64,000 nt of DNA, taken from positions 186,001 through 250,000 of IMG/VR virus record IMGVR_UViG_3300028654_000001; one strand, 5' to 3'. The notes under the pieces are model-generated. The model made no database searches. It was given only the letters and a program-made list of their open reading frames with translations, and had not been told where the DNA came from. Shown piece by piece: positions 9,517 through 63,493 of the stretch. The position numbers and the translations under genes are program-made. Position 1 is the stretch's first letter, and each line of letters begins with the position of its first letter.

Positions 9517-9858
9517 GGGGCTCTTGAGAACTCTCATAATCAAGGATTCAAGGTCTTTGATATGGAACGGCTTTTCTAGTATGAATGGAAAACCCTTTTT
9601 CCCTGCCCAACCTGTTGTCAGAATAAATAGGTTCGTCAACTCAGGGTGATTCGTCTTGATCCAATCATAGAGGGAATCTGCATTCCCATCTGGCAGGCTG
9701 TAATCAGAGATAACTAAGTCGAAAGACTCCGTACTCAGCACTGTCTTAGTTTCAAGCAAGGAGCCAGTACTTCGCACTTCAAAACCATCCGCAGATAGGA
9801 TGGTTGTGAATAACCTCCGAACAACCGGCTCATCTTCGACTAAAAGTATGCGGGTCAC
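9511..9858 (-). CDS. single-domain response regulator (REC/CheY-like)
   Basis: ILLVEDE, DLVISD (phospho-Asp), LPDG, TG and KPF motifs. Confidence 0.9.
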   Translation of the reverse strand: MTRILLVEDEPVVRRLFTTILSADGFEVRSTGSLLETKTVLSTESFDLVISDYSLPDGNADSLYDWIKTNHPELTNLFILTTGWAGKKGFPFILEKPFHIKDLESLIMRVLKSPL

Positions 9859-9944
9859 TCTCTCATATTTTAGAAGTTGTTTAAGGTGGTTAATGTTACA
9901 CTAGGCCACCAATTCATCAGTGTATTCATAACGGTAGGTTAATC

Positions 9945-10064
9945 GTGGAAGTTCCTGAGAAAGTAGTTTCAATTTGCAGAAGACTCGTACGAGCTGGCCA
10001 TCAAGGTTGGCTTGTAGGGGGTGCAGTGCGTGACTCCATCATGGGGGGGCCAAATCTACGATAG
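9945..10064 (+). pseudogene. 5' remnant of a second CCA-adding enzyme gene
   Basis: Translates VEVPEKVVSICRRLVRAGHQGWLVGGAVRDSIMGG then stops; parallels MKVPEKVHLICSTLKQAGFEAWVVGGAVRDSLLG at 11441. Confidence 0.8.
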
Positions 10065-10399
10065 ATGACCCCTCATTGCCAACTTGATGATTTCAATGAG
10101 AGCGTCAATATGAAATGGCTTGGCCAAAAAGTAAGGAAATCCCTCGACCTCGGGCCACCCTGAGATTACAATGAACCTTTCCTTCATTGCCGGGTACTTA
10201 CCCAGAATCCACTTGTACAGGTCATCAGCAGATCCAGATCCAAGCCTCAAGTCTGAGACAACTAAGTCAATCAGCTCGTTATCTAGGAGTAGCTTGGCTT
10301 CGTCGAGGGTCGAAGCCGCCTCGACGATGTAGCCCGAAGAAAGGTGCAGAACATCTTTCTCAAAATGGGCTTGTCTTCCACCAATAGAACGTGTTTCAT
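10056..10399 (-). pseudogene. second REC-domain gene, frameshifted near 10336-10343
   Basis: MKHVLLVEDKPILRKMFCTFL continues in another frame as SGYIVEAASTLDEAK..DLVVSD..KPF; paralogous to 9511..9858. Confidence 0.8.
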
Positions 10400-10428
10400 A
10401 CTCTTTACTTCAGAGAAAATAGTTATGT

Positions 10429-11403
10429 CTAGGTAGTATCGGTTTGGTAAGACCACTGAAATCCCTTATATACCCTACCACTTTTACATAGTGACCTTAG
10501 GGTCATACCTGAGATACCGCATTTAGTGGTGGCTTCTTTGGAGCTTGAATACAACTCCATAGTATCAAGCCCAACTTTCTGAATCCTACGAACTCTGAAC
10601 TTGGCCATCGGGTAGTGAGCATGAGCATGTCTATTGTTTTCACTCTGAGTCGCCCACTCCAAGTTATCAGCCCTATTGTCTATTTTGTTGAGGTTCTGGT
10701 GGTTCACCGTTAGGTCAAGAGAGGTGAATCCTTCAGGAAGTGGTAAGAATGCTAATGCCACAAGACGATGGACTGAAACCTTGGACCCTGCTAGATCTAC
10801 AGTTAGATATGGGTCACCACTACCGTAGGTTACCCTACCGCCTTTCAATCGGACTCGACCTAGGGATGATACCTCAACAGTTTTGTCATTGAATTGTGTG
10901 TTAGCCCACCTCTCACCGGGTAGCTCTTTAGTAGCGTATGCCCACTTAACTCCATACGCTCCTCGAATCCTACCTTGACACGCTAGCCAGATACGGGAGT
11001 AATCATGCGGGATTGACCTTATTGAGGGCCACTCTTTGATAACCTGACCATTCTGATCAAGCTGTAGGACAGCCCTGGAACTAGTTTTTGATCCTGTTGA
11101 GCGGGCAAGCCTTCTGTGATCTCCAGTAGTTGCCCATTCAAGATTTCCTACTCGATTGTCCTTTGTATTCTGGTTCTTGTGGTGGACGATCATATCCTTT
11201 ATCGGAGAATTCCCTAGAAAAGTAAGTGCAACGAGCCTATGTACATGAATCGTGGTTTTCTTTCCGCCTACTGATAGTACAACACTATGGTACCTACCTG
11301 ATTTAGATCCTCTTAGCACATAACTGTCCGGGTTCCGTACTTGACCAGAATCCGATATCTCATACTTTTGAAAGGGTTCTGGTGCGCTTAGCCACTTTTC
11401 CAT
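10429..11403 (-). CDS. NUMOD4/HNH homing endonuclease with two HNH modules
   Basis: YEISDSGQVR, VHRLVALTF..HHKNQNTKDNRVGNLEW and a second VHRLVALAF..NHQNLNKIDNRADNLEW. Confidence 0.9.
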   Translation of the reverse strand: MEKWLSAPEPFQKYEISDSGQVRNPDSYVLRGSKSGRYHSVVLSVGGKKTTIHVHRLVALTFLGNSPIKDMIVHHKNQNTKDNRVGNLEWATTGDHRRLARSTGSKTSSRAVLQLDQNGQVIKEWPSIRSIPHDYSRIWLACQGRIRGAYGVKWAYATKELPGERWANTQFNDKTVEVSSLGRVRLKGGRVTYGSGDPYLTVDLAGSKVSVHRLVALAFLPLPEGFTSLDLTVNHQNLNKIDNRADNLEWATQSENNRHAHAHYPMAKFRVRRIQKVGLDTMELYSSSKEATTKCGISGMTLRSLCKSGRVYKGFQWSYQTDTT

Positions 11404-45306: not shown

Positions 45307-45566
45307 TGCCCACGAAACCCTCTAAGGCTTTTCGAGTAGAAACCCGAGTTGACACGTTCGATGCCTCTTACCAGACATTTCGAGTCAAGTTAGGTATCCG
45401 TAATGCAGCAATAGAAGCCCTCCGAGAAGCCGTAGGCCCTACTACGATAACACCAGTGCTCGGTGGGTTCGAGATAGTTTGCAGAGGGGTATTAGAGATG
45501 TCGGACGATAATGAAAACTCTTTCCTGGAAGCTGCGCGTAGAGTAGCCTCCAAGTTTAGAAGGTGA
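45306..45566 (+). CDS. hypothetical protein
   Basis: Coupled to coaD; ends RRVASKFRR. Confidence 0.6.
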   Translation: MPTKPSKAFRVETRVDTFDASYQTFRVKLGIRNAAIEALREAVGPTTITPVLGGFEIVCRGVLEMSDDNENSFLEAARRVASKFRR

Positions 45567-46087
45567 GCACTATGCCAGAAAAGTCTGCTGAACTGTTGGA
45601 ATTTGATCCACATATCGCGGTTTACGCTGGCAGTTTTGATCCACCTACCAATGGGCACCAAGATCTCATCCTTAGGGCTAGTCGTCAATTCAGTACAGTT
45701 TACGTAGGTATTGGCATAAATTCGGCGAAGAAACCCTTCTTCATACCAGGAGACCGCAAACGGCTCCTCGAGATACTTTGCTCAGGACTAAGCAATGTGA
45801 AGGTAGACCTCTTCAATGGACTCCTAGTCAAGTACTGCGAGCAAGTTCGAGCTGGCGTTATTATCCGCGGGTTCAGGTCAGTCTCAGACTTTGAGGCTGA
45901 GTTAGCCATTGCACATGTAAATGCCCAACAACAACCTAGAATCGAAACCTTCTTCTTAGCTGCTAAGCCTGAGCATACCTTCATCTCTTCCTCCGTAGTC
46001 CGTGAGCTGGATAGACATGACGGGAATCTCGAGTACTATGTTCACCCTGAAGTGGCTCAAGCCATGAGGAAGAAGGCTAGTGGGTAA
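45563..46087 (+). CDS. coaD: phosphopantetheine adenylyltransferase
   Basis: AVYAGSFDPPTNGH, NSAKKP, IIRGFR..DF..E, ET.FL, FISSS.VRE. Confidence 0.93.
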   Translation: MSTMPEKSAELLEFDPHIAVYAGSFDPPTNGHQDLILRASRQFSTVYVGIGINSAKKPFFIPGDRKRLLEILCSGLSNVKVDLFNGLLVKYCEQVRAGVIIRGFRSVSDFEAELAIAHVNAQQQPRIETFFLAAKPEHTFISSSVVRELDRHDGNLEYYVHPEVAQAMRKKASG

Positions 46088-51654: not shown

Positions 51655-52373
51655 GCTACTGTCTCAGCCCCATTCGAATCATCTTCAATGTTGAATGGGG
51701 CTTGGATCACATCATCAAGACTCTGATCCATTGTGAGTGCTACCAAGTTTGAGATCCGAGTCTTCTGATCATCGGTTAGTTCTGGAGGAGTCGTATAGTC
51801 CACATTCAATTGCGAAATGGTGTGGAACACCGATGTTAGGGTCTTAGTATAGGCCAACTCATCGGCCGTATAGTATCCTTGGGAACGCAGTAGGTGAGAG
51901 AACTGAGCTGGATCACCAGTAAGCACCGCTGGCCATGACCTAGCAAACCGCTTGTTGAGTAACCCTATGTAGTCGACAGCCCCATCAACTAGAGTGTTGA
52001 AGGCCCTAAATCGACATCCTGGGTGCTTTGGGTAGAACCAGATGATGGACGTCCCATCACCACGATCCTGAGTCACCCTGGCAGTAGCAGGGGCCGCAGT
52101 GGCCATTGCATGAGCTGTGGCTGTCTTCAGAATCTCGTTGCAGGCAAAGTAGCAATAGTCGTGGCCATCCCCCTCGACCGACTTCACATTTCCGAAATTA
52201 AAATTCCACATTGCCTTACACCAGCCAGTTTCCAAAGCAACCTGGCTAGCTAACACCCAAACGGACTCTTTTTTTGGGACTTCTCCAAACAAGTGAATCC
52301 AAGCCTCGTACAGAGCTCGAATAAACAGTTCTTTGCTGACAGGAGTCTTCTCGGCAATGAGTTCGGAGGGCAT
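51651..52373 (-). CDS. glucosaminidase/FlgJ-like (GH73) peptidoglycan hydrolase
   Basis: QVALETGW, N.NFG.VK, FRAF, GYYTA..Y. Confidence 0.75.
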   Translation of the reverse strand: MPSELIAEKTPVSKELFIRALYEAWIHLFGEVPKKESVWVLASQVALETGWCKAMWNFNFGNVKSVEGDGHDYCYFACNEILKTATAHAMATAAPATARVTQDRGDGTSIIWFYPKHPGCRFRAFNTLVDGAVDYIGLLNKRFARSWPAVLTGDPAQFSHLLRSQGYYTADELAYTKTLTSVFHTISQLNVDYTTPPELTDDQKTRISNLVALTMDQSLDDVIQAPFNIEDDSNGAETVA

Positions 52374-52430
52374 ACCCAAGAGCGGGTATAGATAGACTAC
52401 CTATCGGTTTGACATAAGAGAGGCCCTCTT

Positions 52431-52934
52431 ATGTCAAATTCAAGTGACACCTTCGTTACACTAGTCAAAAAGTACGTTGGCTGCTCGCTTCACGTACGGA
52501 AGGACGACCTTGCAACTTTAGTATGTCGAGGGGTGGATGACCCGGATTAATCGGTTCTCATCAAGACGAACTGTGGTATGTTCGCCTTAGGAGTCATGCA
52601 TGAAGCTGGGGTTGTTCATGACTTACTAGGCCAAAAGTACAAGTCAGGAATGGCCATCTCCTGGGTACGAACCATCGGCAAAGACTTGAAGGCTCTCAAC
52701 AAGTATGTCAGTGGTACAGCCCTCAAGGCTGGGTGTCTGATGCACTACTACACACCCGGGAAAAATGACAACCACGTTGAGTGGCTCCTCTCGGACATGG
52801 ATGACCAGGGTTGTGCTGAGCATGGAGGTGGTGGTAGGACCGACAACGCTATCACCACCGGAGAAGGTGACGTACTCGTCAACTACGGGAGGGCTCTTCA
52901 GGAGTGGTTAGATCCGGACATGCTACTCCCGTAG
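52431..52934 (+). pseudogene. NlpC/P60/CHAP-like amidase gene with an in-frame TAA at 52548-52550
   Basis: ATG 52431 is in frame with 52578..52934; ..KYVG..D*SVLIKTNCGMF..NHVEW..GGG. Confidence 0.55.
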
Positions 52935-53121
52935 CCTCAACTCTAGCTCGGGCCTCCCTCATCCTTGGTAGCAGGTAGTCTTCAACATAAGTTGCTACGA
53001 AGTTCACAAGCAACAGCCCGGAGACCCAAAGCTCTTGCCCTTTACTGTTGACGATCTGGACCTCTCCAGACAAGTCAGAGTTGTAGTTGATGTGACCATC
53101 TGGATGCTCGAAGTGATGCAC
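52879..53121 (-). CDS. hypothetical protein
   Basis: INYNSDLSGEVQI pattern; last gene of the minus-strand NAD operon. Confidence 0.65.
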   Translation of the reverse strand: MHHFEHPDGHINYNSDLSGEVQIVNSKGQELWVSGLLLVNFVATYVEDYLLPRMREARARVEATGVACPDLTTPEEPSRS

Positions 53122-53138
53122 TTTTAGAACCCCTCAAG

Positions 53139-54278
53139 TTAGGAAGCGGTCTTGTACCGCTTCCCCTCTCGGATATCGGTTGAGCTGATATCAAAGTCAC
53201 ATTGAAGTCTATGACACCTGAGGTTTGGTGGACAGGGAAAGTCCATCAAGGTCTTCATAACCCCGTCCAATCGACGGTCAGCTATAGTCAGACCTGTACA
53301 AGTTTCTGTGAAGATCTTGGCCTGCTCCTCGATAGTGATCCCCCATCGTTTAGCATCAAAAAGAGTTTCTAAGCTATCGGCACCCAAGAGGATCTCTATT
53401 CCAGGGAGATGTTTTGCCTTGTCCACATAGTAAGGGGCGCCCCAAGTTATGTAGACATTCCTACCCTGCAGCATCTTGGCTCGCTTGAGGATGTCCCAAG
53501 GCTTGAGAGGATTCTTGTGCGGGGGCTCGGCTTCCAGGGTGAAGGCAACAGGGCCTCCTACCTGGTCAATGTACCCGTCAGCCAGACCAAAGTGCCCAAA
53601 GTGTGGTGGGTTGAAAGATCCCGGAAGCAAGGCCCCGCGCCTCCGATACTCATCCTTGGGAAACTCCAGGAGTCTCTTGCCTGTACTCGAGAAGTAAGGT
53701 CGGCGACGAAGTCGTTCTTCAGACAGGACTTCAGCCCTACCATTGCGGAACTCTTCGATGCACCCCTCAGGTAGGTCTAGGCCAGTGATGAAAGTATTGG
53801 TGGCATCCTTGATGGAACTGATCAGGAGAGCGTTACAGATCTGACCGTCCAGGTGCCTTCTTTCGGCTCCAACTCCCTTAACCAGCTTGACATAGGTCAA
53901 GGTAGCTTTGTACTCTTGGAAGGTTGCCACGAAGATTCGGTGGTCTCCCTTATGGGCTGTAGTGCTCGCTGTGACCGCACAGACTCCGATCCCAATAGCT
54001 GGGGCCCCTTCATATTGGTACGCTCTGTAGAAGGCATCCATAGCGAAGTCCATGGCCGTCCCTTCGTTGGCATAACCGTCTGGAGAGAACCCAAGAAAGT
54101 TGTCAATGTCCTCCTTGGCATACGGCATATGACAACCAACTAGTACATCTGAGACCCCCGGTACATCCCAAATGTGACCAAAAGTCCCGGCACCCGCCAT
54201 ACCGGCAATGCAGAGCCGTACTTTCTTGGTTGGAAGGAAGTCTACTGAATCAAGTGATTGTAGTTGGGGTAGTGGCAT
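53139..54278 (-). CDS. CinA-like N-domain fused to a nucleotidyl (NMN adenylyl)transferase
   Basis: PGSFNPPHFGH (HxGH), LGAD, DISSTDIR; N-terminal GAG..VPG.S..PY. Confidence 0.75.
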   Translation of the reverse strand: MPLPQLQSLDSVDFLPTKKVRLCIAGMAGAGTFGHIWDVPGVSDVLVGCHMPYAKEDIDNFLGFSPDGYANEGTAMDFAMDAFYRAYQYEGAPAIGIGVCAVTASTTAHKGDHRIFVATFQEYKATLTYVKLVKGVGAERRHLDGQICNALLISSIKDATNTFITGLDLPEGCIEEFRNGRAEVLSEERLRRRPYFSSTGKRLLEFPKDEYRRRGALLPGSFNPPHFGHFGLADGYIDQVGGPVAFTLEAEPPHKNPLKPWDILKRAKMLQGRNVYITWGAPYYVDKAKHLPGIEILLGADSLETLFDAKRWGITIEEQAKIFTETCTGLTIADRRLDGVMKTLMDFPCPPNLRCHRLQCDFDISSTDIREGKRYKTAS

Positions 54279-54282
54279 ACTT

Positions 54283-55326
54283 TCAGCTTCCTGCTGCTAC
54301 GAGTTTAGGTTCAGCATTCTTCCTCAAAAGACTGCAAAAAGAACCTGGTACCTCAAATGGCCTGAAGGTAGGCTTCCCGACGAGGCTCTTGAGCAGGTTG
54401 TCAAAAGCCTCGTGAACATCATCTGCCTTGGAGGGCCTCATTCTTCTCTCTGGGTTCAGACAGATCTTGAGTAGGTTTTGGATCTCTCGGGGTACCGCAT
54501 CAGGCATCTCGTTGGTTTTAACGTCTCCGCCGAGAATAGCAACCATACACTTGACGGCCATATAGATGTCGGTCGCTTCCGAAGCTTCCTTTTTTTCTGG
54601 TACCTCAGGCGGGTAGTAGTCAGCATACCTAGTGATGAGTACGCGAATTCTGGTCATACCAGAGTAGATTGAATCAGCGGGATCAGGCTCGCCAACGGGT
54701 CTACTCCCATGAGGAGTGTCCTCTAGTGCCCGCTCTCTAGTAGAGGCCGAGTAGCACCAATCGATGAGCTTGGCGCCGTGGTTCTGACCAAACAACAGGA
54801 TGTGAGGGGGGAGAACTGCCCCATGCAGGAAACCATTCTTGTGCGCCCACCATAGGCCAACCAGGGTTCTCTTGAACATCCAAGCCATGTCCCGATAGTC
54901 AATCCCTTTTGGGTAGGCTCTAAGAACATCATCAATGGTGAAGTAGTCGGGTATCAATGAAAGGATGTTCCCCCTCTGTCCCCGAGAGTCAAACCCTCCG
55001 TAGCTAGTTGGATAGTAGAGGTTGAACTTGGACCAATCCGGATCCGTTGATGTTAGTCCATTCAGGACTTGGCTCTCCCTGATCAATAAATCGTTGTTAC
55101 TTGGATCCGAGCAGATCCTAACGATGACCGGAACCTCAACCACATCATCATCGTCATCCTCTAGAATGTGATCAAAGCGAGTCCGAGGCCCTGCGTGCTT
55201 GACAGGAGTTTTTGGAGCTGGGTTCTCATCCTTGTAAGTCCCCTGGTAAAGGTTGCAGAGATCACCCTCCATCAACCGAGCCCCAAACGTCACGCTCTTC
55301 TTGTCACCAAGAGCTAGCGTCGGCAT
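54283..55326 (-). CDS. atypical Ser/Thr kinase-like protein with an inserted TRFDH tag
   Basis: N.DL..RE, AWMFKR.L..L..AH..G.LHGAVLPPHIL, LIDWCYS, YPPE, DIYM. Confidence 0.8.
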   Translation of the reverse strand: MPTLALGDKKSVTFGARLMEGDLCNLYQGTYKDENPAPKTPVKHAGPRTRFDHILEDDDDDVVEVPVIVRICSDPSNNDLLIRESQVLNGLTSTDPDWSKFNLYYPTSYGGFDSRGQRGNILSLIPDYFTIDDVLRAYPKGIDYRDMAWMFKRTLVGLWWAHKNGFLHGAVLPPHILLFGQNHGAKLIDWCYSASTRERALEDTPHGSRPVGEPDPADSIYSGMTRIRVLITRYADYYPPEVPEKKEASEATDIYMAVKCMVAILGGDVKTNEMPDAVPREIQNLLKICLNPERRMRPSKADDVHEAFDNLLKSLVGKPTFRPFEVPGSFCSLLRKNAEPKLVAAGS

Positions 55327-56693
55327 GTTAGTTCTTTGTCATCAGCGGTTGACCCATACGAGAAAATAGTGACAGGAGCTCTCATAGTTTTAGTTATTCC
55401 AGATATTAGACGATCTGTATTCTTAAGGGTAGTGAAAACTGGCTCAGCATAGATATCTAAGAAGTGAGAGTAGGGGATCCCATCCTTATCGAAGTACTTT
55501 TTGAGGTATTGGTAGGCTTCCCAAGTATTTGCGTCGAGGAGTATCTTGTAGAAAGGCTTGGTCGAACAGTCGTACCGTAAGCAGACTTTTTGTGGGCCGT
55601 GGATGTGGTCGAGGTGATTGAGGGCTATCTCATCCAACCCACCAAGAACTTCGCGGGCGTATCTGGCCATAACGAAGTCGTAGTAACCTACCCGGAAGGC
55701 ACCTTGCCACTCTCCTTGAGTGTTATGCTCTACTAATCTGGCATCTGGGTCCTCCGATGGGAAGGGTCCAGTCCCGTGCCGCGTAAGATAGGTTCGAGTA
55801 ACCCACATCCTGGTCACCTTTCCAGAGAACCCCTTGAGTAGTTCTAGGGCGTTGTGGAAAGTGCAGTTGCTCCAAGTAGAGTGAGGGTGGAACCCGTACT
55901 CCTCGTCCAGAAGTACTCCTTGAGCCCCCTCGAATAGGGTGACCCCTGATTCGAGAGCCTTGGTTAGGTAGTCTTGGTTGACTACCCTGACCCCTGCCTT
56001 GTCGATTAGGTGGTAGTAGTTCTCCATGAAGTACTCGACCAAAGTTCTGTCCCTGAGCATGTCATATTCGAACATGAGCCTTCGAGTCATATCCACGGAT
56101 AACTCAACGGGTAGGTCGTCCAAAAGGGGGGTCGTCTCCTCCAACTTTCTCTGACGAATAACTTCAAGTTTGTCCTTGATGACTGATGGCTTTCGGAAGT
56201 CCCTCATCCGAATAGCACCCTCCGGATCTTGTATTGAGTCTGAGACAGTTTCCCCAATACCCATGCCACATGACCCGTGGCGCCCAAACCCAACACTCTT
56301 ACAGGTAAAGAGAGCCTCTCGGTGCAGCTCTCGAAGGCGGTTAGTCGCCATGTGGAAAGGAGTGGTGACTAGGGCCATCTCATCAATGGCCAACCTTTGG
56401 TAGGCGTCGGTCACCCCAAGAGTTTCAAGGTGCTCCTCTTCGTATTGGAGAAGAAGCGGGTTCACCACCATGTAACGGCTAAGGTAAGTCTCCGCGCCGG
56501 CAAGAGTACCCGAACTAAACTGGGAAAAACAATGAGTTTTACCGTCTCTTAGGACTACATGATGGGCAGCTTGAGCACCACCATTAAAACGAACTACAGT
56601 GTGAGACCCCTCCCTACGAGTAAGGTAGTCTACTACACTACCCTTCCCTTCGTCCCCAAACCCCAATCCAACAACGATCCATACCTTAGCCAT
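55314..56693 (-). CDS. purA: adenylosuccinate synthetase-like protein
   Basis: GLGFGDEGKG, RFNGGAQAAH, HGSCGMGIG, FEGAQG.LLD, TRHGTGPFP, FRVG. Confidence 0.85.
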   Translation of the reverse strand: MAKVWIVVGLGFGDEGKGSVVDYLTRREGSHTVVRFNGGAQAAHHVVLRDGKTHCFSQFSSGTLAGAETYLSRYMVVNPLLLQYEEEHLETLGVTDAYQRLAIDEMALVTTPFHMATNRLRELHREALFTCKSVGFGRHGSCGMGIGETVSDSIQDPEGAIRMRDFRKPSVIKDKLEVIRQRKLEETTPLLDDLPVELSVDMTRRLMFEYDMLRDRTLVEYFMENYYHLIDKAGVRVVNQDYLTKALESGVTLFEGAQGVLLDEEYGFHPHSTWSNCTFHNALELLKGFSGKVTRMWVTRTYLTRHGTGPFPSEDPDARLVEHNTQGEWQGAFRVGYYDFVMARYAREVLGGLDEIALNHLDHIHGPQKVCLRYDCSTKPFYKILLDANTWEAYQYLKKYFDKDGIPYSHFLDIYAEPVFTTLKNTDRLISGITKTMRAPVTIFSYGSTADDKELTCRR

Positions 56694-56726
56694 GGAATTT
56701 CACCGAAGTGCTTCAAATAAATGAGC

Positions 56727-56761
56727 AGTAGTTCGATATAAAGAGAAATACCGAACTACTG
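56727..56761. terminator. intergenic hairpin between the vWA and purA-like genes
   Basis: cagtagttcg...cgaactactg inverted repeat. Confidence 0.5.
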
Positions 56762-56775
56762 TTATGTTATGCAAA

Positions 56776-57744
56776 TTACAGTCTTTGGATCTTCGGGGGT
56801 TTTCCTGGGTCCACTCCCTTGGCCTTGGCCAAGTCCACCAATGAGGATGCTATCTTGTTCGAGACCAATTGAGAGGTTCCGGTAGCCTCGAGAGCTGCCT
56901 TGGCCCCATCAACGGTTACGACCTTCTCACAGACACCCATCGTGGTTGCAATGAGCTCACAGATGTCCTCCTCATCTTGAAGGAGCAGGACATTCTCTGG
57001 CCCAAGTAACTTCTTCCAAGCATCCTGGATCTTGGTATCACGACCATGGTTGGTGTGCTGGGGTATGATGTAGAAGACGTTGTACCGTTGCTGACACTCC
57101 TTGATGATGTCAGCAGTTGGTATCTCAGCTACTTCCATTGTCTCTCCGAAGAGAGTTTTGACCGACTCACGTCTTACCGCCGGATGCGCGTACTCATCAC
57201 CAATGATGAATAAGTAGCCCTTTTTCTGTCGTTTCTCCCAACAGTCGATCTTGGTATGTCGAGCGAAGAAGTAGATGGCATTCTGGTAGGACTCACCGTT
57301 GTTACCCCCACCGTTACCCTCGAGCCAGAAGGACTCGAGGTCTTCATCCATCCGGTTGTCACTCTCGAATTGACCAAACTGAGCTGAGCCTCGGTCTGAG
57401 AACTCATCCCCGACAGCCCCAAACAAGATCTGAGTATCTGGAATACCAACTTTGCCAATTAGGCCGTGTAGCTTAGGGAGTTTCCCGTGAGCTACACGAG
57501 GTACCGACTCCATTGACCCAGTGACATCCAGGATAATCCCAACTGCAATTGAGTTTGGGTGCTCCAATGAGTCACAAGACTCGCGTATTGCCACCCCAAG
57601 TGGATTCAGACGTGGGTGAACATTCTGCTGGTCCCGTGGTTTTGACGCCTGTGCAGCGTGGTGTGCAAAGGTTGGCTGACCAGTCTGTTGACGAGTCGTG
57701 CTCCTTTGTTGATAGAAATCATGACTCCAACTTCCGCCTCCCAT
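56776..57744 (-). CDS. vWA-domain protein
   Basis: MIDAS ILDVTGSM, AVGD, QFESD, EGNGGG..ESY, LFIIGDE. Confidence 0.85.
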   Translation of the reverse strand: MGGGSWSHDFYQQRSTTRQQTGQPTFAHHAAQASKPRDQQNVHPRLNPLGVAIRESCDSLEHPNSIAVGIILDVTGSMESVPRVAHGKLPKLHGLIGKVGIPDTQILFGAVGDEFSDRGSAQFGQFESDNRMDEDLESFWLEGNGGGNNGESYQNAIYFFARHTKIDCWEKRQKKGYLFIIGDEYAHPAVRRESVKTLFGETMEVAEIPTADIIKECQQRYNVFYIIPQHTNHGRDTKIQDAWKKLLGPENVLLLQDEEDICELIATTMGVCEKVVTVDGAKAALEATGTSQLVSNKIASSLVDLAKAKGVDPGKPPKIQRL

Positions 57745-57800
57745 GAGAGACCTCTACTTTCCTTCATGTTTACTGTTAGAACAACTCGTTGTGGTCTGAT

Positions 57801-58046
57801 CTAATCTTCATCGTCTCTAAGAATCCGATCGAACCGAGTACTCCCAAGAAGCGTTGTACTCGGTTTACTAGACACCGATGGCACTTCATCGGTGTCTAGA
57901 ATTCGATCGAATCGAGTTGGTCGAGAAGTACTTTGGGTATCTGGTACTTGACTCCGAATAGGCTCTACACCCGCTTGACTTTTAGGCTCTTGTTTTCTAC
58001 GAGACATAAGAGTGTAGAAGTCATCTGTCCAAAAACCGCCGCCCAT
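57801..58046 (-). CDS. mini-protein: copy of the vWA N-terminus + two TRFDR tags
   Basis: MGGGFWTDDFY vs MGGGSWSHDFY; PTRFDRIL and STRFDRIL. Confidence 0.8.
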   Translation of the reverse strand: MGGGFWTDDFYTLMSRRKQEPKSQAGVEPIRSQVPDTQSTSRPTRFDRILDTDEVPSVSSKPSTTLLGSTRFDRILRDDED

Positions 58047-58053
58047 AAGCCTC

Positions 58054-59442
58054 TTAGACCCGTGAAAGATTCTTCTCTGAATTCTTTCGAACTTCTGAGA
58101 ACTTCATGTCACGTATGAGCTTGCCGTTTTCGAAGACAACCTGAAGCACGTCTGACTTGGTTGACCCAGCTGGAACCGACTTGAACTCCCCACCTTCCAT
58201 AATGAGGCTCAGTCGCCCCGACTTTGAAACCTTGCCTGGATCAGTAACAGGATCTTTGAACACGGGCACGGTTGCCCCTGTATCAGTTGTGATCTCCGAG
58301 CACTTCAGAGCCCACTTCTGGGTATCGCGATCCAACTGCTGAAGTAAGCCGCCGCCCATACCGAAGGCAATGTTCGAGGTTGAGTACTTGTGAGCCGTTA
58401 TTGTGGCAAGGATCTCACGAAGTGAGTCAATGTTGATGCCGTCACCTTGAATGAGCTTGAAGTAGGGGGGAAGAACCTTGAACCCACGCATGTTCCTGGT
58501 CATCCCAAGCTTGTTCTCAAGTGTCTGTAGGCACCGAAGAACCATTGCGGGTGGATCCCCTGAATCAGGTCGGATCACCAAGCAACCACCAGAATTCTTT
58601 ACCTGATCAAGGAGCTCTCCGCACCACATGTTCTCGATAACATTGAAGATATCGTAACTATCCGACACACAGGCAACGACCTTGTCCTTTTTCAGGAACT
58701 GAGTGATCATGTTGCGGTAGGCGAGGAGCTCTCGTTCACGGCCCCACGAAGTAATGCTCGAATGCTCAGCCGCTGGGATTGAGAATCCGGCCATGGGCTC
58801 ACCATAGAAAGCCCTAGCAAACATGATCCCTTCGAGGGTATCGGTACCCCTGAAGTTCACGAGATGGCTCATACCTCCGATGCCAGCCGATTCATGTGAG
58901 CTGACCCCTCGGGCTCCGAAGTCGTGCAGCTTGAAGTAGATCTCGGCCCAAGGATCGTTGGCTGTCTCCAATAGGTGCTCGAGAATGACTCGCTTGCAGT
59001 AGTAGGACTGGGTGGCCACCGTACTCGGGTACCATGTGCGAACAATCTGAGCTTCTAACCAACTGGCTGCCCAGAAGGTATCAGCGCCGCCGGTGCTCTC
59101 CAATGATAGGACAATGTTCCGGGTTGGAACCTCCAGACCCTCAGGCACCGCCTTGATCCTCACAGGCCAGTACCCACCGTTGGCCACTATTTTCCCAAAA
59201 CCTTCTGCATTGAATGGCTCCCCATGAGCCTCCAGAACCTCCTTGGCTTCGACAACATCCGCGTCCGTGATGGGTGTCGTAAGGTATTCCTTGATCAGGT
59301 ACTGCAGTCCAAAGAAAATTGTAGATCCGAACTTACCACCCCGTGACTCCATGTAATCGTACATCCCAGTGGTGCTCGGTGGGTAAGTCAGCCAATGGGC
59401 TGACTTATAACTGTCTGTATTTAATATTGGATTGAATCTCAT
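58054..59442 (-). CDS. nadV: nicotinamide phosphoribosyltransferase (NAMPT)
   Basis: TDSYK, FFGLQY, WYP.TVAT, LHDFGARG, PAAEHS, VSDSYD, IRPDSGDP, QGDG, FGMGG.LLQ, KDP.TD.GK.SK.GR. Confidence 0.95.
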   Translation of the reverse strand: MRFNPILNTDSYKSAHWLTYPPSTTGMYDYMESRGGKFGSTIFFGLQYLIKEYLTTPITDADVVEAKEVLEAHGEPFNAEGFGKIVANGGYWPVRIKAVPEGLEVPTRNIVLSLESTGGADTFWAASWLEAQIVRTWYPSTVATQSYYCKRVILEHLLETANDPWAEIYFKLHDFGARGVSSHESAGIGGMSHLVNFRGTDTLEGIMFARAFYGEPMAGFSIPAAEHSSITSWGRERELLAYRNMITQFLKKDKVVACVSDSYDIFNVIENMWCGELLDQVKNSGGCLVIRPDSGDPPAMVLRCLQTLENKLGMTRNMRGFKVLPPYFKLIQGDGINIDSLREILATITAHKYSTSNIAFGMGGGLLQQLDRDTQKWALKCSEITTDTGATVPVFKDPVTDPGKVSKSGRLSLIMEGGEFKSVPAGSTKSDVLQVVFENGKLIRDMKFSEVRKNSEKNLSRV

Positions 59443-59451
59443 CTTGTCCTC

Positions 59452-60183
59452 TCATAACTCGAAGTTAAAACCGCTTTGAACTGCTTTATCGTACTTCTTC
59501 TGGTCAAATCTGTAAAGTTGGGCAGGCCTGCCTAGTTTAGGATGGATTGCACCACCGACCCCAACTAGGATGCCCATGAGGATAATTCGGCGTCTGAAGT
59601 TACCCTTATCAAGCTTCTTCTGAAGGATCGCTTCGTATAACTGTTGCAACTGCCCGAGAGTGAACGTCGTCGGTAGCAGGTTGAAACCTATTGGAGCGTA
59701 TCTGATCTTCCCTTGAAGTCGGTTAAGGGCTAACTCTAGGATCTTCTTGTGATCAAAAGCCAACTTCATTCGACTCAGCTTATTAACTGAAGTCCAGACA
59801 GCCAGGTCTGCATCGTCCCCGCCGACGATATCTTCGTAGTCGGTTTTTCTAACCAAGGCGAAGTAAGCAACTGAGATGACTCTCCCGCGTGGATCACGAA
59901 ATGGATCTCCAAAGGTATAGAGTTGTTCCAGATACTCGAAACGGGCTCCGGTCTCCTCTTCTACCTCGCGTACAACAGCTGCTTCTAAGCTCTCATTACC
60001 CCCAATGTTGACGTAACCCCCTGGAAGTGCCCAGTGATGTTTGAAAGGGTCCCTAGCCCGTCGAATTAGAAGAACCTTGAGTGGGTTGTCCTCGTCACTT
60101 GGATCAAAGCCGAATACAATTCCATCTACGGTAAGGGCTGACATCGGCCAATCGTAAACGAACCTCTTCTTTTCTTTGGTCAC
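59452..60183 (-). CDS. nrtR: NrtR-type Nudix-wHTH transcriptional regulator
   Basis: WALPGG..RE..EETG Nudix box, LEQLYTF..RDPRGR, LAFDH, FTL..LQ..YE.IL..NFRR..GRPA.LY. Confidence 0.9.
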   Translation of the reverse strand: MTKEKKRFVYDWPMSALTVDGIVFGFDPSDEDNPLKVLLIRRARDPFKHHWALPGGYVNIGGNESLEAAVVREVEEETGARFEYLEQLYTFGDPFRDPRGRVISVAYFALVRKTDYEDIVGGDDADLAVWTSVNKLSRMKLAFDHKKILELALNRLQGKIRYAPIGFNLLPTTFTLGQLQQLYEAILQKKLDKGNFRRRIILMGILVGVGGAIHPKLGRPAQLYRFDQKKYDKAVQSGFNFEL

Positions 60184-60524
60184 TTGTCAATCCCCAGAAA
60201 CTTCTTAGTAATTGATGCAGCCTCAACCATTGGAATCTTTCTGTGTGAAACGGTTCTGTTGAGCTTTGGCCTGAAGTACACGATGCAGGCCATCTCTAGC
60301 AGGTCTAAGTCAGCCTCTGGGTCAACTCTTCGTATGAAGATCTGATCGAATTCCTTTGACTTATGCCTGACTATAGCTGAATGAACGCTAATTGATTGAC
60401 CTATATACATCAACTCCCCTAATAGGAATAGAAAATAAATCACAGAGGTTCTATACACCTCGACTTCTTCAAGGAGTTTTGCCTCAACCTCCTCGGTTAC
60501 TACCTTCCGTATGATCTTGGCCAT
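60180..60524 (-). CDS. GIY-YIG-like small protein
   Basis: VIYFL..MYIGQS..H..E..I..P.LN. Confidence 0.6.
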   Translation of the reverse strand: MAKIIRKVVTEEVEAKLLEEVEVYRTSVIYFLFLLGELMYIGQSISVHSAIVRHKSKEFDQIFIRRVDPEADLDLLEMACIVYFRPKLNRTVSHRKIPMVEAASITKKFLGIDK

Positions 60525-60538
60525 CCGTGGTCGGATAC

Positions 60539-60559
60539 TTATAGTAGAAGTGACAATAA
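60539..60559. promoter_or_regulatory. candidate NrtR operator
   Basis: TTATAGT-N7-ACAATAA imperfect palindrome (GT-N7-AC core) just upstream of the nrtR-nadV operon. Confidence 0.65.
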
Positions 60560-60656
60560 GTCAAGGTAGAAAAGAATATTTCTGTAACCAGTTGTAATCA
60601 TTACGGTTAACCAAATGACTCTCACATTTTTGACATACTTGGTGTAAAGGTGCCAA

Positions 60657-61118
60657 ATGCCAGTGCAAAGGCGAGGGCGTGCGGTTGACTTTGTAAAGGA
60701 AATCCTGAACCACGAGCACAGAGACTGGGTTCGATCCGATGACCCAAGCACTTCCAGTTGGGGCTTCGAGTGTCGGATTTGCAAATCCCGCTACCTAATA
60801 GCCATCGAAGCCTTCCGATACCAAGGGGGCGACCGCTACTCGAATGCTCTCCGAGATTGTGCAATGGATCCGAGAAAGGATCCATTGGAGACAGTTCTTG
60901 GGTTCGATTGTATCGCCTGTCATACGACTGAGGGCGTCAAACTGGAACCTTCAAGAACTCAATATGGTACAACGTATCCTCGAACGAGGTTCGAACGAAT
61001 ACTTGACCCTGAGCCAGAAGATCCTAACATCGACATCCCTCTCTGCCGAAGTTGCGCAGAGGATCATCATTCGTACTGGGATGAAATGTGGCAGATGGTT
61101 CGATATGATCAGATGTGA
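60657..61118 (+). CDS. Zn-finger protein with internal TRFER tag
   Basis: CRIC, CIAC, CRSC..H; YPRTRFERIL; GGTGTA 10 nt upstream. Confidence 0.75.
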   Translation: MPVQRRGRAVDFVKEILNHEHRDWVRSDDPSTSSWGFECRICKSRYLIAIEAFRYQGGDRYSNALRDCAMDPRKDPLETVLGFDCIACHTTEGVKLEPSRTQYGTTYPRTRFERILDPEPEDPNIDIPLCRSCAEDHHSYWDEMWQMVRYDQM

Positions 61119-61468
61119 GGAAGCAAATGAAAGAAGTTAGGTATTTCACCTGCGAAACTGTCAGTGAGGCTAAGTGGTCCCTAATCGCAGAGGATCACCG
61201 ACCTCGCCTTGATGTCCGCTTCTTCGGACTGAGACGGGACATCGAGGGTCGCCCCGAGGAAGAGGTCTACCAGGTCAAAGACCCAAACTATGCAAAACTT
61301 TACCAGGAGATCAACAACCAAACTCCTGGCAGCTACGTCTTCAGGAAGTTCAAACTTACCCAAGCCGAGTGGTGCTGGATTCGCGGCGTCATCCACAGCC
61401 TGATGTGTGACAACGCTACCTCGGTACCAATCGAGGCTATCTTAGTGGGGGACTCAAAGGCTCTTTAG
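61115..61468 (+). CDS. hypothetical protein
   Basis: Coupled to the previous gene. Confidence 0.65.
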   Translation: MRKQMKEVRYFTCETVSEAKWSLIAEDHRPRLDVRFFGLRRDIEGRPEEEVYQVKDPNYAKLYQEINNQTPGSYVFRKFKLTQAEWCWIRGVIHSLMCDNATSVPIEAILVGDSKAL

Positions 61469-62236
61469 TCCTTCAACCATCTTGTCGACCCGAGCCCAAA
61501 GATCGGTGAGGGTCGAGTTGTTGTCCAATACCCAATCGAAGTCATCGTCATGTAGGGAAAGTAAATCATTCTCACTCTTGTGATCTGGGGATACTTTGAT
61601 CTCTTTGACCTTCCGCTTCACACGGACAAGCTTTCCACCAGCTTTGCGAACGGCCTCAGCTTCATTCTGATATCGTAGGTCGGTGAGTACCACGTCTGTA
61701 CGAGGTACTCCAATGAGGACCGGGCCTCCCTTGATCCCAGAGCAATGAAAGTTTGGGTTACTTGAGTGACGGGCTTCAGCAAGTTGGTAGAGTCCCAGCT
61801 TCTGGTCGTACCCAAACTTGCCGGTAGCCAGCCTGTTGGTCATACGGATAGCGTACTCCGCCCAGATAGGCTCGTAGCACTCATTGCGCCCCCACCCGTC
61901 ACCCAAGGTTTGGAGAGCGTGCCTGACCGTCAAGCAAACTTGAGTATGGTCCTCAGCGGAATGAACTAAGGGACTTCCTCCGAAGATAGTTCTGGGGTAC
62001 CTCGGATCTTCCTTGTTCCGATTCTCACTCGGACCCCACAACTGGTCATCAGTGAAATCAAACACATCTTTCAGGATACGCTTAAGGGGATCAGCAAAAG
62101 CAATCGGAACATAGTTGTGGGCTTGAACTAGCTGTCTAGCAGCTTCGTCCTTACCCGCACCGGCGCTACCTCTCTTACGGGAGAGCCCATTGAACCAACC
62201 AGCCTCAGTGGTGAGACCCGAGATAGCTATCAACAT
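61454..62236 (-). CDS. deoxynucleoside monophosphate kinase
   Basis: GAGKD, FADPLK, R..LQ.LG..WGR, DLRY.NE, H.SE. Confidence 0.88.
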   Translation of the reverse strand: MLIAISGLTTEAGWFNGLSRKRGSAGAGKDEAARQLVQAHNYVPIAFADPLKRILKDVFDFTDDQLWGPSENRNKEDPRYPRTIFGGSPLVHSAEDHTQVCLTVRHALQTLGDGWGRNECYEPIWAEYAIRMTNRLATGKFGYDQKLGLYQLAEARHSSNPNFHCSGIKGGPVLIGVPRTDVVLTDLRYQNEAEAVRKAGGKLVRVKRKVKEIKVSPDHKSENDLLSLHDDDFDWVLDNNSTLTDLWARVDKMVEGLKSL

Positions 62237-62245
62237 GTACTCGGA

Positions 62246-63493
62246 CTACACCGAGTAAGGGACGAGGCCTTCGTCTGAGTTCAATATAGACCAAAGGATC
62301 ATTCCTAGTGTAGACCAATCTACACTAGTCTTATCTATAGACGAGGAATCATTGACCAAGTCCCTAAGCTTGATTACCTCAACGTAGGTTTTCTCTGTGT
62401 CAACCTCTATACCGAAAGTCTCTCCGGATTGAGCTATTCCCATAAGGTGGTCTCGCTCAGCCTTAGTGATCCTCCCGTAGAACAACGTGCTTGTGTGAGC
62501 TGATAGAGTACCTGCCAGCTGCAAGGTACCCAGCTCCTTGAGTCGAGCTGGGTCTATGGTGAAAGAGGTTTCCTCGTGGAGCTCTTCGAGGGCCACTTTC
62601 TTGGTCTCCCCTTTATCTTCCTTGGCGCTCCCACCTGGTAGCTCAATAATATACCCTGTATTAGTCCTAGCCGGGCTTCTAAACTCTTTTACCAAGAGAA
62701 CCTCAGTATCCCACAGATGCTTGAGACCCTCTTCCTCAGGACGGTAGAGAAGCGCTACAGATGAGACGTCTGAACGTCCGAACACGAACTCATTTTTCTT
62801 GGCCCTTTGTTCGGCTGCAATCCAAACATTGACATGAAGGCACCAGCAAAAGACTTTGTCCATCTGCTGTCCCACCCGGAATGTCCAAAGGACTCGAGCA
62901 CTGTCCAGGCGGTTGCCAGCGGCCGTCTGGGACTTATACCACCTCTGGAAGGTGGTGTCCTTCCAGACGAGCAAGGGTACCTGAGCTTCGCCGCCGACTC
63001 GTAGGGAACCCTCTCCCAGGCTCTTGACGGCATCCTCGAGGGTGGTGTCCAGTGTCGAGTAGTTGGCCACCTTCAACTTGGTAGCCATGTGCTGAATGTA
63101 TTGAACCTTCTGAGCATCAGGTGGGGTACCAAGAATCACCTTCCCTGTGTCTGCCCAGACTCCGAATTCGACATTGGTTGTAAGACCTGGGAGAGTATTC
63201 AGATCTCGAGGAATCCAGAAAACAATCACATCAGCCATATTCAGTGCGGAGGTTTCCCACTCAACCTGGTCGACGTAATCTCCGAACACTTTTCCATCAC
63301 GAGGTTCCGGAACAAATACGTGACCATCGAACCCAAGCTTCTCAAGTAGTTCGAGGGCTTCGGGTCTCCAACTCTTGGTTTCCTTATCCCTAGGTGTAGG
63401 CCCCGCCAAAAACAGACTCTTCACAACCTCTGTGGGAAGATCCTCTTTAGCATAGACCACCTTCATGCCCGACTTCCATGTCTCTGGATTCAT
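62246..63493 (-). CDS. nucleoside deoxyribosyltransferase-like domain fused to a Nudix hydrolase
   Basis: LFLAGPTPR..SWR..WE..ADVIVFW..TTNVEFG; EFRSP..ELPGGS..ALEELHEET. Confidence 0.8.
   Translation of the reverse strand: MNPETWKSGMKVVYAKEDLPTEVVKSLFLAGPTPRDKETKSWRPEALELLEKLGFDGHVFVPEPRDGKVFGDYVDQVEWETSALNMADVIVFWIPRDLNTLPGLTTNVEFGVWADTGKVILGTPPDAQKVQYIQHMATKLKVANYSTLDTTLEDAVKSLGEGSLRVGGEAQVPLLVWKDTTFQRWYKSQTAAGNRLDSARVLWTFRVGQQMDKVFCWCLHVNVWIAAEQRAKKNEFVFGRSDVSSVALLYRPEEEGLKHLWDTEVLLVKEFRSPARTNTGYIIELPGGSAKEDKGETKKVALEELHEETSFTIDPARLKELGTLQLAGTLSAHTSTLFYGRITKAERDHLMGIAQSGETFGIEVDTEKTYVEVIKLRDLVNDSSSIDKTSVDWSTLGMILWSILNSDEGLVPYSV

What the first reader, a model, noticed from the sequence alone, without database searches (positions are those of the whole stretch)
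53139..60559. NAD reconstitution genes with their own NrtR regulator and operator
NAMPT plus an NMNAT-like protein correspond to the two-step nicotinamide salvage route (NARP2-type) that phages use against NAD-depleting defences such as Thoeris and SIR2 systems. Here the operon also encodes NrtR, an ADP-ribose-responsive repressor family, with a GT-N7-AC palindrome (60539-60559) overlapping a TTGACT box upstream. Inference: the phage senses ADP-ribose released by host NADases and induces counter-defence on demand.
Basis: partly seen in the sequence, partly recalled or inferred. Interest (0 to 1): 0.65.

Follow-up and report, generated by a model that had tools for sequence, protein, structure and literature searches.

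The report
Huge phage's self-regulated NAD salvage operon
A 512-kb soil phage carries genes that rebuild the cofactor NAD together with its own NrtR-type repressor and a matching DNA operator, so this known anti-defence pathway is probably switched by ADP-ribose, the breakdown product of NAD, rather than running all the time.

Summary
On the minus strand, 60524 to 53139, lies a gene row. It encodes a full-length NrtR (Nudix plus NrtR winged helix), a NadV-type NAMPT, and a two-domain protein whose C-terminal half is a NadD-type adenylyltransferase.

The 21-bp site TTATAGT-N7-ACAATAA (60539-60559) is real and unique in the 512,571-bp genome. It sits between a TTGACT box and a TATAAG box, 15 nt before the first ATG. 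A matrix built only from operators of the closest bacterial NrtRs ranks it 4th in the genome. About 0.0025 such sites are expected in that 130-bp spacer.

Related huge-phage contigs keep a site at the same place. One (L096) has a compact NrtR-NAMPT-CinA/NadD operon behind three tandem operators. An unrelated 636-kb phage has two sites before nadM-nadV.

ADP-ribose sensing is inferred: two of the known contact arginines are kept and AraR's replacements are absent. The counter-defence role is inferred from NARP2 work.

I found no paper describing a phage-encoded NrtR. Verdict: a new regulated variant of NARP2, with an unusual adenylyltransferase.

The parts
60539..60559 (.). Candidate NrtR operator, TTATAGT-N7-ACAATAA (sense strand: TTATTGT-CACTTCT-ACTATAA)
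   Evidence: unique in the genome with up to 1 mismatch; 4th best hit in the genome for a matrix built from bacterial NrtR operators; a site at the same place in L002, L008, L095 and L096.
60559..60564 (-). -35-like hexamer TTGACT, sharing one base with the operator
   Evidence: Read. Conserved in L002 and L008. Not called by the consensus scan.
60538..60543 (-). -10-like hexamer TATAAG, 15 nt after TTGACT and inside the operator's right arm
   Evidence: Read. Conserved in L002 and L008. Weak: the spacer is short and the host's promoter type is unknown.
60180..60524 (-). orf114, first gene after the operator; GIY-YIG-like motifs seen by eye, no family hit
   Evidence: Homologues precede NrtR in L002 and L008. 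It is fused in frame to NrtR in L095.
59452..60183 (-). NrtR-family regulator (Nudix domain plus NrtR winged helix); its start overlaps the stop of orf114
58054..59442 (-). Nicotinamide phosphoribosyltransferase (NadV/NAMPT)
   Evidence: The only PF04095 gene in the genome. 45-54% identical to the NAMPTs that sit beside NadM-Nudix genes in viral contigs.
57801..58046 (-). orf81, no family
   Evidence: Kept in L008.
56776..57744 (-). orf322, phrog_2971, vWA-like (a lead only)
56726..56761 (-). 14-bp stem-loop with a T-rich tail between orf322 and the synthetase gene; possible internal terminator or attenuator
   Evidence: -23.5 kcal/mol, z -3.7. L002 and L008 have a different, G+C-rich hairpin at the same place.
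55314..56693 (-). PurA-like adenylosuccinate synthetase (keeps GDEGKG; not PurZ)
54283..55326 (-). Protein-kinase-fold protein with HGA in place of HRD (possible pseudokinase)
   Evidence: Paired with the CinA/NadD gene in L007 too.
53139..54278 (-). Two-domain protein: CinA/PncC-like N-terminal half (residues 1-200) and NadD-type adenylyltransferase C-terminal half (217-379; motifs PPHFGH and ISSTDIR)
52879..53121 (-). orf80, last small gene of the row, no family
   Evidence: Kept in L008. A terminator-like site follows at 52786-52770.

Best explanation
This is an autoregulated NAD salvage operon of a 512-kb phage.

Enzymes. NAMPT makes NMN from nicotinamide and PRPP. The NadD-type domain of the CinA/NadD protein then adenylates NMN to NAD. 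Together these give a NARP2-type route.

Control. The phage's own NrtR dimer binds the 21-bp palindrome that lies over the promoter of the operon, and so represses it.

Expected time course. NrtR is made from the operon it represses. The operon should therefore be expressed when the genome enters the cell, and then be shut off as NrtR accumulates. When an ADP-ribose-like ligand fills the Nudix pocket, NrtR leaves the DNA and expression continues. NAD cleavage by TIR or SIR2 defence effectors would raise ADP-ribose and keep the pathway on. Without NAD cleavage, the PRPP-consuming pathway is throttled.

Shown by sequence: the family membership of NrtR and NAMPT, the fold of the third enzyme, the site, its position, and its recurrence in other phages.

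Inferred: binding of NrtR to the site, the identity of the ligand, NMN use by the transferase, and the counter-defence role.
For: Gene identities.

The site:
- It fits the family rule of a 21-bp palindrome with a GT-N7-AC core (PMC2330246).
- It is unique in the genome.
- The closest bacterial NrtRs (50-57% identical) carry [AT]TAGTGT-N7-ACACTA[AT] palindromes 20-70 bp before nrtR.
- A matrix made from those sites ranks the window site 4th in 512 kb. The three better hits lie inside ORFs.

Orthologous loci:
- L002 and L008 keep TT[AC]T[TG]GT-CACTNCT-ACTATAA. One of the three varying positions is the dyad centre.
- L095 has the perfect palindrome TTTTGGT-N7-ACCAAAA 22 nt before the ATG.
- L096 has a compact NrtR-NAMPT-CinA/NadD operon. 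The three best matrix hits of its 16.7-kb locus (8.5, 19.2 and 18.4 bits) all lie in the 70-bp spacer before NrtR.

Other huge phages:
- LR756504 (636 kb) has NrtR, and two of the four best hits of the locus lie just before nadM-Nudix and NAMPT.
- Bacillus phage G starts its PncA-PncB-NadD-NadE cluster with an NrtR-like gp273.

Ligand: the S. oneidensis NrtR ADP-ribose contacts Arg41 and Arg98 are kept as R42 and R99, invariant in 12 sequences. AraR has Gly at the second.

Rationale: NARP2 over-produces NAD and consumes PRPP even without a defence system, and was toxic in E. coli (bioRxiv 10.1101/2024.02.11.579819).

No Adps/Prs, no NadE and no second NAMPT in the genome. No riboswitch.
Against: - No experiment exists, and no RNA data: all runs that hold the stretch are on record as DNA.
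- The window site scores 9.65 bits, far below the bacterial training sites (18-30), and only 6 of 10 positions pair.
- The promoter boxes are weak (15-nt spacer), the scan did not call them, and the host's promoter type is unknown.
- The protein fails the NCBIfam NrtR equivalog cut-off (178 against 400 bits).
- Its best solved relative is the arabinose sensor AraR.
- Two of the four alignable ADP-ribose contacts differ (Asn43 to R44, Lys76 to E77).
- The REVEEETGA box is intact, so the protein may hydrolyse its ligand.
- A hairpin at 56726-56761 may uncouple the adenylyltransferase gene from the NrtR-controlled promoter.
- The adenylyltransferase is NadD-type, a class that usually prefers NaMN, and the genome has no NadE.
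- In L005 and phage G no convincing palindrome was found.
Confidence: 0.62

Rival explanations
1. Housekeeping NAD homeostasis, not counter-defence. The operon supplies NAD for the phage's own NAD-using enzymes. NrtR works as it does in bacteria, matching salvage to NAD turnover, and the ADP-ribose comes from the phage's own enzymes.
For: The genome encodes an NAD-dependent ligase domain (148 bits) and a Macro domain that frees ADP-ribose (146 bits). Jumbo phages are reported to pair NAD synthesis with NAD-dependent enzymes (PMC11662467). The operon sits among nucleotide and cofactor genes: dNMP kinase, a PurA-like synthetase and CoaD. A CinA-like domain points to recycling of the NMN that the ligase releases.
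Against: The same enzyme pair, NAMPT plus an NMN adenylyltransferase, was shown to overcome Thoeris, DSR and SIR2-HerA. The two roles do not exclude each other. Nothing in the sequence separates them.
Confidence: 0.25
2. The NrtR-like protein is mainly an enzyme. It would be an ADP-ribose pyrophosphatase, playing the role of the Nudix half of NadM/NatV in classical NARP2. The winged helix would be a leftover and the palindrome a coincidence.
For: The REVEEETGA part of the Nudix box is intact here and in most phage and bacterial relatives. An intact box goes with activity in NuhA (PMC2330246). The CinA/NadD protein lacks a Nudix half, so the activity would otherwise be missing. phrog_1198 annotates such proteins as hydrolases.
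Against: The winged helix scores 81 bits and is conserved across all 12 aligned proteins. Operators recur in five independent phage loci, three of them tandem in L096. The G-x5-E spacing of the box is broken by an insertion, as in the inactive S. oneidensis NrtR. Enzyme and repressor roles can coexist.
Confidence: 0.08
3. The operator is bound chiefly by the host's NrtR. The phage operon would plug into the host NAD regulon, and the phage NrtR would act on host operators.
For: The phage half-sites (TTATTGT / ACAATAA) fall within the variation of bacterial sites such as TTAGTGT-N7-ACAATAA in L084. L096's sites score inside the bacterial range.
Against: The host is unknown. The window clade's recognition helix (DKGNFRRRII) differs from the bacterial DKRNFRKKIL, and its operator differs in step, which suggests a private protein-site pair. 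That reading is an inference.
Confidence: 0.05

Closest known systems
NARP2 of Vibrio phage KVP40 (NadV plus NatV; bioRxiv 10.1101/2024.02.11.579819)
   Same: A NadV-type NAMPT plus an adenylyltransferase encoded together in a large phage. No Adps, so it is not NARP1.
   Different: The second enzyme here is a CinA-like/NadD-type fusion, not a NadM-Nudix fusion. A dedicated NrtR repressor and operator are present. Extra conserved genes (vWA-like, PurA-like, kinase-like) lie between the two enzymes. No function has been tested.
Bacterial NrtR regulons (S. oneidensis prs-nadV, Synechocystis nadM-nadV; PMC2330246)
   Same: A Nudix plus winged-helix repressor beside nadV. A 21-bp palindrome with a GT-N7-AC core lies over the promoter. 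Tandem sites occur in some loci (L096, LR756504). The repressor regulates its own gene.
   Different: It is encoded by a lytic-type huge phage, so the repressor is absent when the genome arrives. The half-sites (TTATNGT) diverge from those of the closest bacterial clade (TTAGTGT). The Nudix box is largely intact. In one relative it is fused to a GIY-YIG-like domain.
Bacillus phage G gp273 with the gp275-gp283 NAD cluster
   Same: An isolated jumbo phage with an NrtR-like gene (annotated MutT/NUDIX hydrolase) at the head of an NAD salvage cluster.
   Different: The route is Preiss-Handler (PncA, PncB, NadD, NadE). Identity is 37-40%. I found no palindrome there.
NARP3 (PnuC plus NadR-like; PMC13464706)
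   Same: A phage NAD-restoring module whose bacterial counterpart has a DNA-binding regulator domain.
   Different: The NARP3 enzyme has lost the HTH domain and is unregulated. Here a separate regulator is kept.

Membership tests
[quoted passage not shown] | N-terminal Nudix-like domain | tested here: met
   PF00293 68.5 bits. Aligned to 3gz5 and 5bs6.
[quoted passage not shown] | C-terminal NrtR-type winged helix | tested here: met
   PF21906 81 bits against a cut-off of 27. The alignment runs to residue 226-233 of the solved NrtR and AraR.
[quoted passage not shown] | Palindromic operator of about 21 bp (GT-N7-AC core in most groups) upstream of the target genes | tested here: met
   Site at 60539-60559. 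Matrix rank 4 in the genome. Recurs in L002, L008, L095, L096 and LR756504.
[quoted passage not shown] | ADP-ribose-binding residues of S. oneidensis NrtR (Arg41, Asn43, Lys76, Arg98) | tested here: inconclusive
   R42 and R99 are kept. Asn43 is R44 and Lys76 is E77. AraR's replacements (Phe36, Leu67, Gly89) are absent.
[quoted passage not shown] | NCBIfam equivalog NF050029 score cut-off | tested here: not met
   178 bits against 400. It is a family member but not the curated equivalog.
[quoted passage not shown] | DNA binding that ADP-ribose relieves | not testable with these tools
   Needs a gel shift or a reporter assay.
NARP2 (NAMPT plus NMNAT) | NadV-type NAMPT | tested here: met
   NF006629 564 bits against 405; phrog_448 472 bits.
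NARP2 (NAMPT plus NMNAT) | NMN adenylyltransferase encoded by the same phage | tested here: inconclusive
   NadD fold (1kaq, E 4.7e-7), with HxGH and ISSTxxR motifs. All NadD models score below their cut-offs. The substrate is unknown. It is the only candidate, because the other PF01467 gene is CoaD.
NARP2 (NAMPT plus NMNAT) | Absence of Adps, which separates it from NARP1 | tested here: met
   No PF13793 match in the complete genome.
NARP2 (NAMPT plus NMNAT) | Rescue of the phage from NAD-depleting defence | not testable with these tools
   Needs plaque assays.
PncC/CinA NMN deamidase | Ser/Lys catalytic dyad (S31 and K63 of AtCinA; PMC5384747) | tested here: not met
   The fold matches CinA. 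By motif alignment the Lys position is I58 and varies in the family, and the Ser position is Gly or Met. The equivalents of S48, Y58 and R145 (S43, Y53, R141) are kept. The alignment was made by hand, so confidence is moderate.
PurZ (2-aminoadenine pathway) | NCBIfam NF038379 cut-off | tested here: not met
   38.8 bits against 300, over the N-terminus only. The nearest phage genes are PurA-like genes of mycobacteriophages.

The most novel reading that the evidence does not exclude
The phage NrtR is both sensor and enzyme in a counter-defence circuit. It would read ADP-ribose, or a TIR-made ADP-ribose isomer, as the alarm that an NADase defence has fired, and release the operon. With its largely intact Nudix box it would then cleave the ligand to AMP and ribose-5-phosphate. 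That would reset the switch and feed PRPP and ATP back into NAMPT and the adenylyltransferase. It would be the first phage counter-defence induced by the product of the defence it counters.
Probability: 0.12. Interest if true: 0.85.

Novelty: new variant of a known kind. Interest (0 to 1): 0.62.

Why it matters
NARP2 is known to work, but it is costly. It drains PRPP and over-produces NAD even when no defence is present.

A phage-borne repressor that reads the breakdown product of NAD would make the pathway conditional. NARP1 achieves that through its substrate.

If confirmed, this would be a case of a phage sensing the chemical output of host immunity and tuning an anti-defence pathway to it.

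The finding also supplies:
- a compact three-gene version (L096) that is easy to test;
- a new type of phage adenylyltransferase, a CinA-like/NadD fusion;
- a reason to re-annotate 'MutT/NUDIX hydrolase' genes such as phage G gp273.

Tried and rejected
- Near-identical DNA in GenBank phages: none.
- NARP1: rejected, no Adps/Prs in the genome.
- A second NMNAT: the other PF01467 gene is CoaD.
- NadE to complete a deamidated route: absent.
- PurZ / Z-genome reading of the synthetase: rejected.
- NAD riboswitch or any other Rfam RNA in 52000-61500: none.
- More operator copies in the genome: only 7 sites with up to 2 mismatches, the rest inside ORFs or unconvincing. A site at genome position 412441 shares the 11-mer GTAGAAGTGAC but lies inside a 607-aa ORF.
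- A recurrent phage promoter motif around TTGACT or AAATATTC: not found.
- Palindromes before phage G gp273 and before the NrtR of LR756504: none convincing. In LR756504 the sites lie before nadM instead.
- In L005 only a half-conserved site and a GTGT-N7-ACAC candidate were seen.
- RNA evidence: all runs that hold the stretch are on record as DNA. Laying contigs from four rhizosphere runs showed the same sequence with no variation in the operator, so it gave no information.
- The Huang 2009 NrtR structure paper and the supplementary site tables of Rodionov 2008 are not held.


Full report
**Setting.** The window is bases 186001-250000 of a 512,571-bp virus record with direct terminal repeats, rated complete. 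The G+C content is about 48%. The window also holds HNH endonucleases, a CCA-adding enzyme, a dNMP kinase and structural-protein-like genes. The same sequence occurs in at least four rhizosphere metagenomes. No RNA run holds it.

**Anatomy of the gene row.** The finding lies on the minus strand. Reading 5' to 3' from a 132-bp divergent spacer (60525-60656), the genes are as follows.

| Gene | Coordinates | Identification |
|---|---|---|
| orf114 | 60180-60524 | no family |
| NrtR | 59452-60183 | PF21906 81 bits, PF00293 68.5 bits |
| NAMPT | 58054-59442 | NF006629 564 bits (cut-off 405) |
| orf81 | 57801-58046 | no family |
| orf322 | 56776-57744 | phrog_2971; vWA-like as an Atlas lead |
| PurA-like synthetase | 55314-56693 | adenylosuccinate synthetase family |
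| kinase-fold protein | 54283-55326 | sub-threshold Pkinase |
| two-domain protein | 53139-54278 | CinA-like plus NadD-type |
| orf80 | 52879-53121 | no family |

Most gene junctions are tight or overlapping. The exception is an 82-nt gap after orf322. It holds a 14-bp stem-loop with a T-rich tail (-23.5 kcal/mol, z -3.7). L002 and L008 carry a different, G+C-rich hairpin at the same junction. A structure there is therefore conserved, and it may lower or end transcription before the last three genes.

**NrtR.** The protein aligns over both domains to solved family members: BtAraR 5bs6 at 2e-37 and S. oneidensis NrtR 3gz5 at 6e-33. It fails the strict NCBIfam equivalog cut-off, 178 bits against 400.

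The AraR paper (PMC4666351) lists the ADP-ribose contacts of S. oneidensis NrtR. I mapped them through the alignment, using a 3-residue offset between chain index and residue number.

- Arg41 and Arg98 are kept as R42 and R99. Both are invariant in 12 aligned phage and bacterial sequences.
- AraR has Gly at the second of these positions.
- Asn43 is R44.
- Lys76 is E77, the catalytic-type glutamate.

The REVEEETGA part of the Nudix box is intact. The G-x5-E spacing is broken by an insertion, as it is in S. oneidensis NrtR. An ADP-ribose-like ligand is therefore likely but not shown, and residual hydrolase activity is possible.

**The third enzyme.** The 379-aa protein belongs to a small family of 21 members, all from metagenomes. 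GenBank phages hold one relative, in a 485-kb uncultured phage.

An AlphaFold model from the family alignment has pLDDT 88.5 and pTM 0.88. Its C-terminal half matches NadD structures (1kaq, E 4.7e-7). Its N-terminal half matches CinA/PncC structures (6mr3, 5kol, 2a9s, 4uux). The family profile hits NadD at 3.5e-9. The motifs PPHFGH and ISSTDIR are the NadD/NMNAT signatures (the motif identities rest on established knowledge).

I aligned the CinA motifs by hand against the conserved residues listed in PMC5384747.

- The substrate-binding equivalents are kept: S43, Y53 and R141.
- The Ser31/Lys63 dyad is not kept.

The N-terminal domain is therefore probably not a deamidase. It may bind a mononucleotide; that is an inference.

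The genome has no NadE, no Prs/Adps and no second NAMPT. The only other PF01467 gene is CoaD. The simplest route is nicotinamide to NMN to NAD. NMN use by a NadD-type domain remains untested.

**The operator.** TTATAGTAGAAGTGACAATAA at 60539-60559 is the only match with up to 1 mismatch in the genome. On the sense strand the region reads TTGAC[T TATTGTCACTTCTAC TATAA]G, followed by 14 nt and then the ATG. The site therefore fills the space between a -35-like and a -10-like box. The boxes are weak. The spacer is 15 nt, the scan did not call them, and the host's promoter type is unknown.

The family rule from Rodionov 2008 is a 21-bp palindrome with a GT-N7-AC core, and the site meets it.

For an independent test I fetched the 80 closest bacterial NrtR loci, at 42-57% identity, from Bacteroidota, Planctomycetota, Verrucomicrobiota and others. 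I listed every GT-N7-AC 21-mer with at least 4 of 5 outer pairs complementary. There were 82, against 38 expected. They cluster 20-70 bp before nrtR and form two motif groups: [AT]TAGTGT-N7-ACACTA[AT] and TTTG[TC]GT-N7-AC[AG]CAAA.

I built a matrix from the 24 distinct sites of the first group and scanned the phage genome with it.

- The window site ranks 4th of 512,551 positions, at 9.65 bits.
- Shuffled genomes give about 10 such sites, so about 0.0025 are expected in the spacer.
- The three better hits lie inside ORFs.
- The phage half-site ACAATAA also occurs in bacterial sites in L082 and L084.

**Comparative evidence from other phages.**

- L002 (NrtR 91% identical) and L008 (95%) keep the whole operon. 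They keep the site as TTCTGGT-CACTCCT-ACTATAA and TTCTTGT-CACTACT-ACTATAA. The three loci differ at three positions of the site, one of which is the dyad centre. The flanking promoter block is equally conserved.
- L095 (208-kb contig, NrtR 48%) has the same gene order. A perfect palindrome, TTTTGGT-TGCCTGT-ACCAAAA, lies 22 nt before the ATG. There the orf114-like domain is fused in frame to NrtR in a 388-aa ORF.
- L096 (168-kb contig) has a compact NrtR (7992-8696), NAMPT (8710-10083) and CinA/NadD (10080-11183) operon. The three best matrix hits of its 16.7-kb locus (8.5, 19.2 and 18.4 bits, the last two inside the bacterial training range) fill the 70-bp spacer before NrtR.
- L005 (NrtR 58%) keeps the operon, but only a half-conserved site and a GTGT-N7-ACAC candidate.
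- LR756504 (636 kb), a separate huge phage, has an NrtR (45%). Three small genes downstream lie a NadM-Nudix-like gene and NAMPT. The best and the 4th-best matrix hits of the locus lie in the spacer just before nadM, and one of them encloses a TATAAT.
- Bacillus phage G opens its PncA-PncB-NadD-NadE cluster with an NrtR-like gp273, annotated as a hydrolase. I found no palindrome there.

Most viral NAMPT loci retrieved have the classical NadM-Nudix partner and no NrtR. The regulated form is therefore a minority, seen here mainly on contigs of 85-636 kb; L002's contig is only 10.8 kb, likely a fragment.

**Helix and operator.** The recognition-helix segment is DKRNFRKKIL in the bacterial proteins and in L096 and L005. 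It is DKGNFRRRII in the window clade. The operator changes in parallel, from AGTGT to T[TGA]GT arms. This suggests co-variation, but it was not tested statistically.

**Mechanism.** The best reading is given under Best explanation. The repressor is encoded in the operon it controls and is absent when the genome enters the cell. The circuit is therefore a negative feedback loop whose set point is raised by the ligand. It is not a switch that is off until the alarm sounds.

The functional rationale comes from the NARP2 study. NARP2 over-produces NAD and consumes PRPP even without a defence system, and could not be cloned in E. coli.

The main rival is plain NAD housekeeping for the phage's own NAD-dependent ligase and Macro-domain chemistry. 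Sequence alone cannot separate the two.

**Literature.** Full-text searches for NrtR together with phage terms returned no description of a phage-encoded NrtR or of a regulated NARP pathway. The NARP3 paper and the Aravind survey mention NrtR only as a bacterial regulator. The library does not hold most subscription journals.

**Verdict.** This is a new regulated variant of NARP2, with a new adenylyltransferase architecture, and it recurs in several huge phages. It is readily testable.

Noticed in passing
window 45563-46087 (+): A phage-encoded phosphopantetheine adenylyltransferase (CoaD): TIGR01510 164 bits against a cut-off of 103, and PDB 1o6b at 1.7e-34. This is a coenzyme A step in a phage. 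Relatives L005 and the P0008 contig carry a similar gene nearby.
   Followed up: partly
window 60180-60524 (-); L095 7662-8828: orf114 shows GIY-YIG-like motifs by eye (VIY..YIG..R..E..N) but has no family hit. It precedes NrtR in L002 and L008, and is fused in frame to NrtR in L095. Its role in the regulator is unknown.
   Followed up: partly
window 55314-56693 (-): A PurA-like adenylosuccinate synthetase conserved inside the NAD operon (L002, L005, L008, L095). It is 38% identical to the PurA-like genes of cluster C mycobacteriophages and is not PurZ. Why it travels with NAD salvage is unexplained. One possibility is restoring adenine nucleotides.
   Followed up: partly
window 54283-55326 (-); L007 9000-11131: A protein-kinase-fold protein with HGA in place of the catalytic HRD. 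It overlaps the start of the CinA/NadD gene and is paired with it in L007, where NrtR and NAMPT are absent. This may be a separate two-gene unit.
   Followed up: partly
window 56726-56761 (-): A strong stem-loop between orf322 and the synthetase gene. L002 and L008 have a hairpin of different sequence at the same junction, so the structure is conserved but not the sequence.
   Followed up: partly
window 60594-60604: A perfect 11-bp palindrome, GTAATGATTAC, in the divergent spacer nearer the plus-strand gene 60657-61118 (153 aa, faint zinc-ribbon hit). It is only partly kept in L002 and L008. It may be a second regulatory site.
   Followed up: no
genome 444584-445285 (-) and 175896-176249 (-), outside the window: An NAD-dependent DNA ligase adenylation domain (148 bits) and a Macro domain (146 bits). 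The phage both uses NAD and can release ADP-ribose itself.
   Followed up: partly
window 61454-62236 (-) and 62246-63493 (-): A dNMP kinase (phrog_139) lies next to a 415-aa gene whose homologues in L005, L007 and L008 carry a nucleoside 2-deoxyribosyltransferase-like domain (PF15891). This is a nucleotide-metabolism pair on the far side of the divergent spacer, conserved in the same relatives.
   Followed up: no
L003 (Bacillus phage G) 5854-6609: gp273, annotated MutT/NUDIX hydrolase, covers the NrtR winged helix as well and heads the phage's PncA-PncB-NadD-NadE cluster. It probably deserves re-annotation as an NrtR-like regulator.
   Followed up: partly
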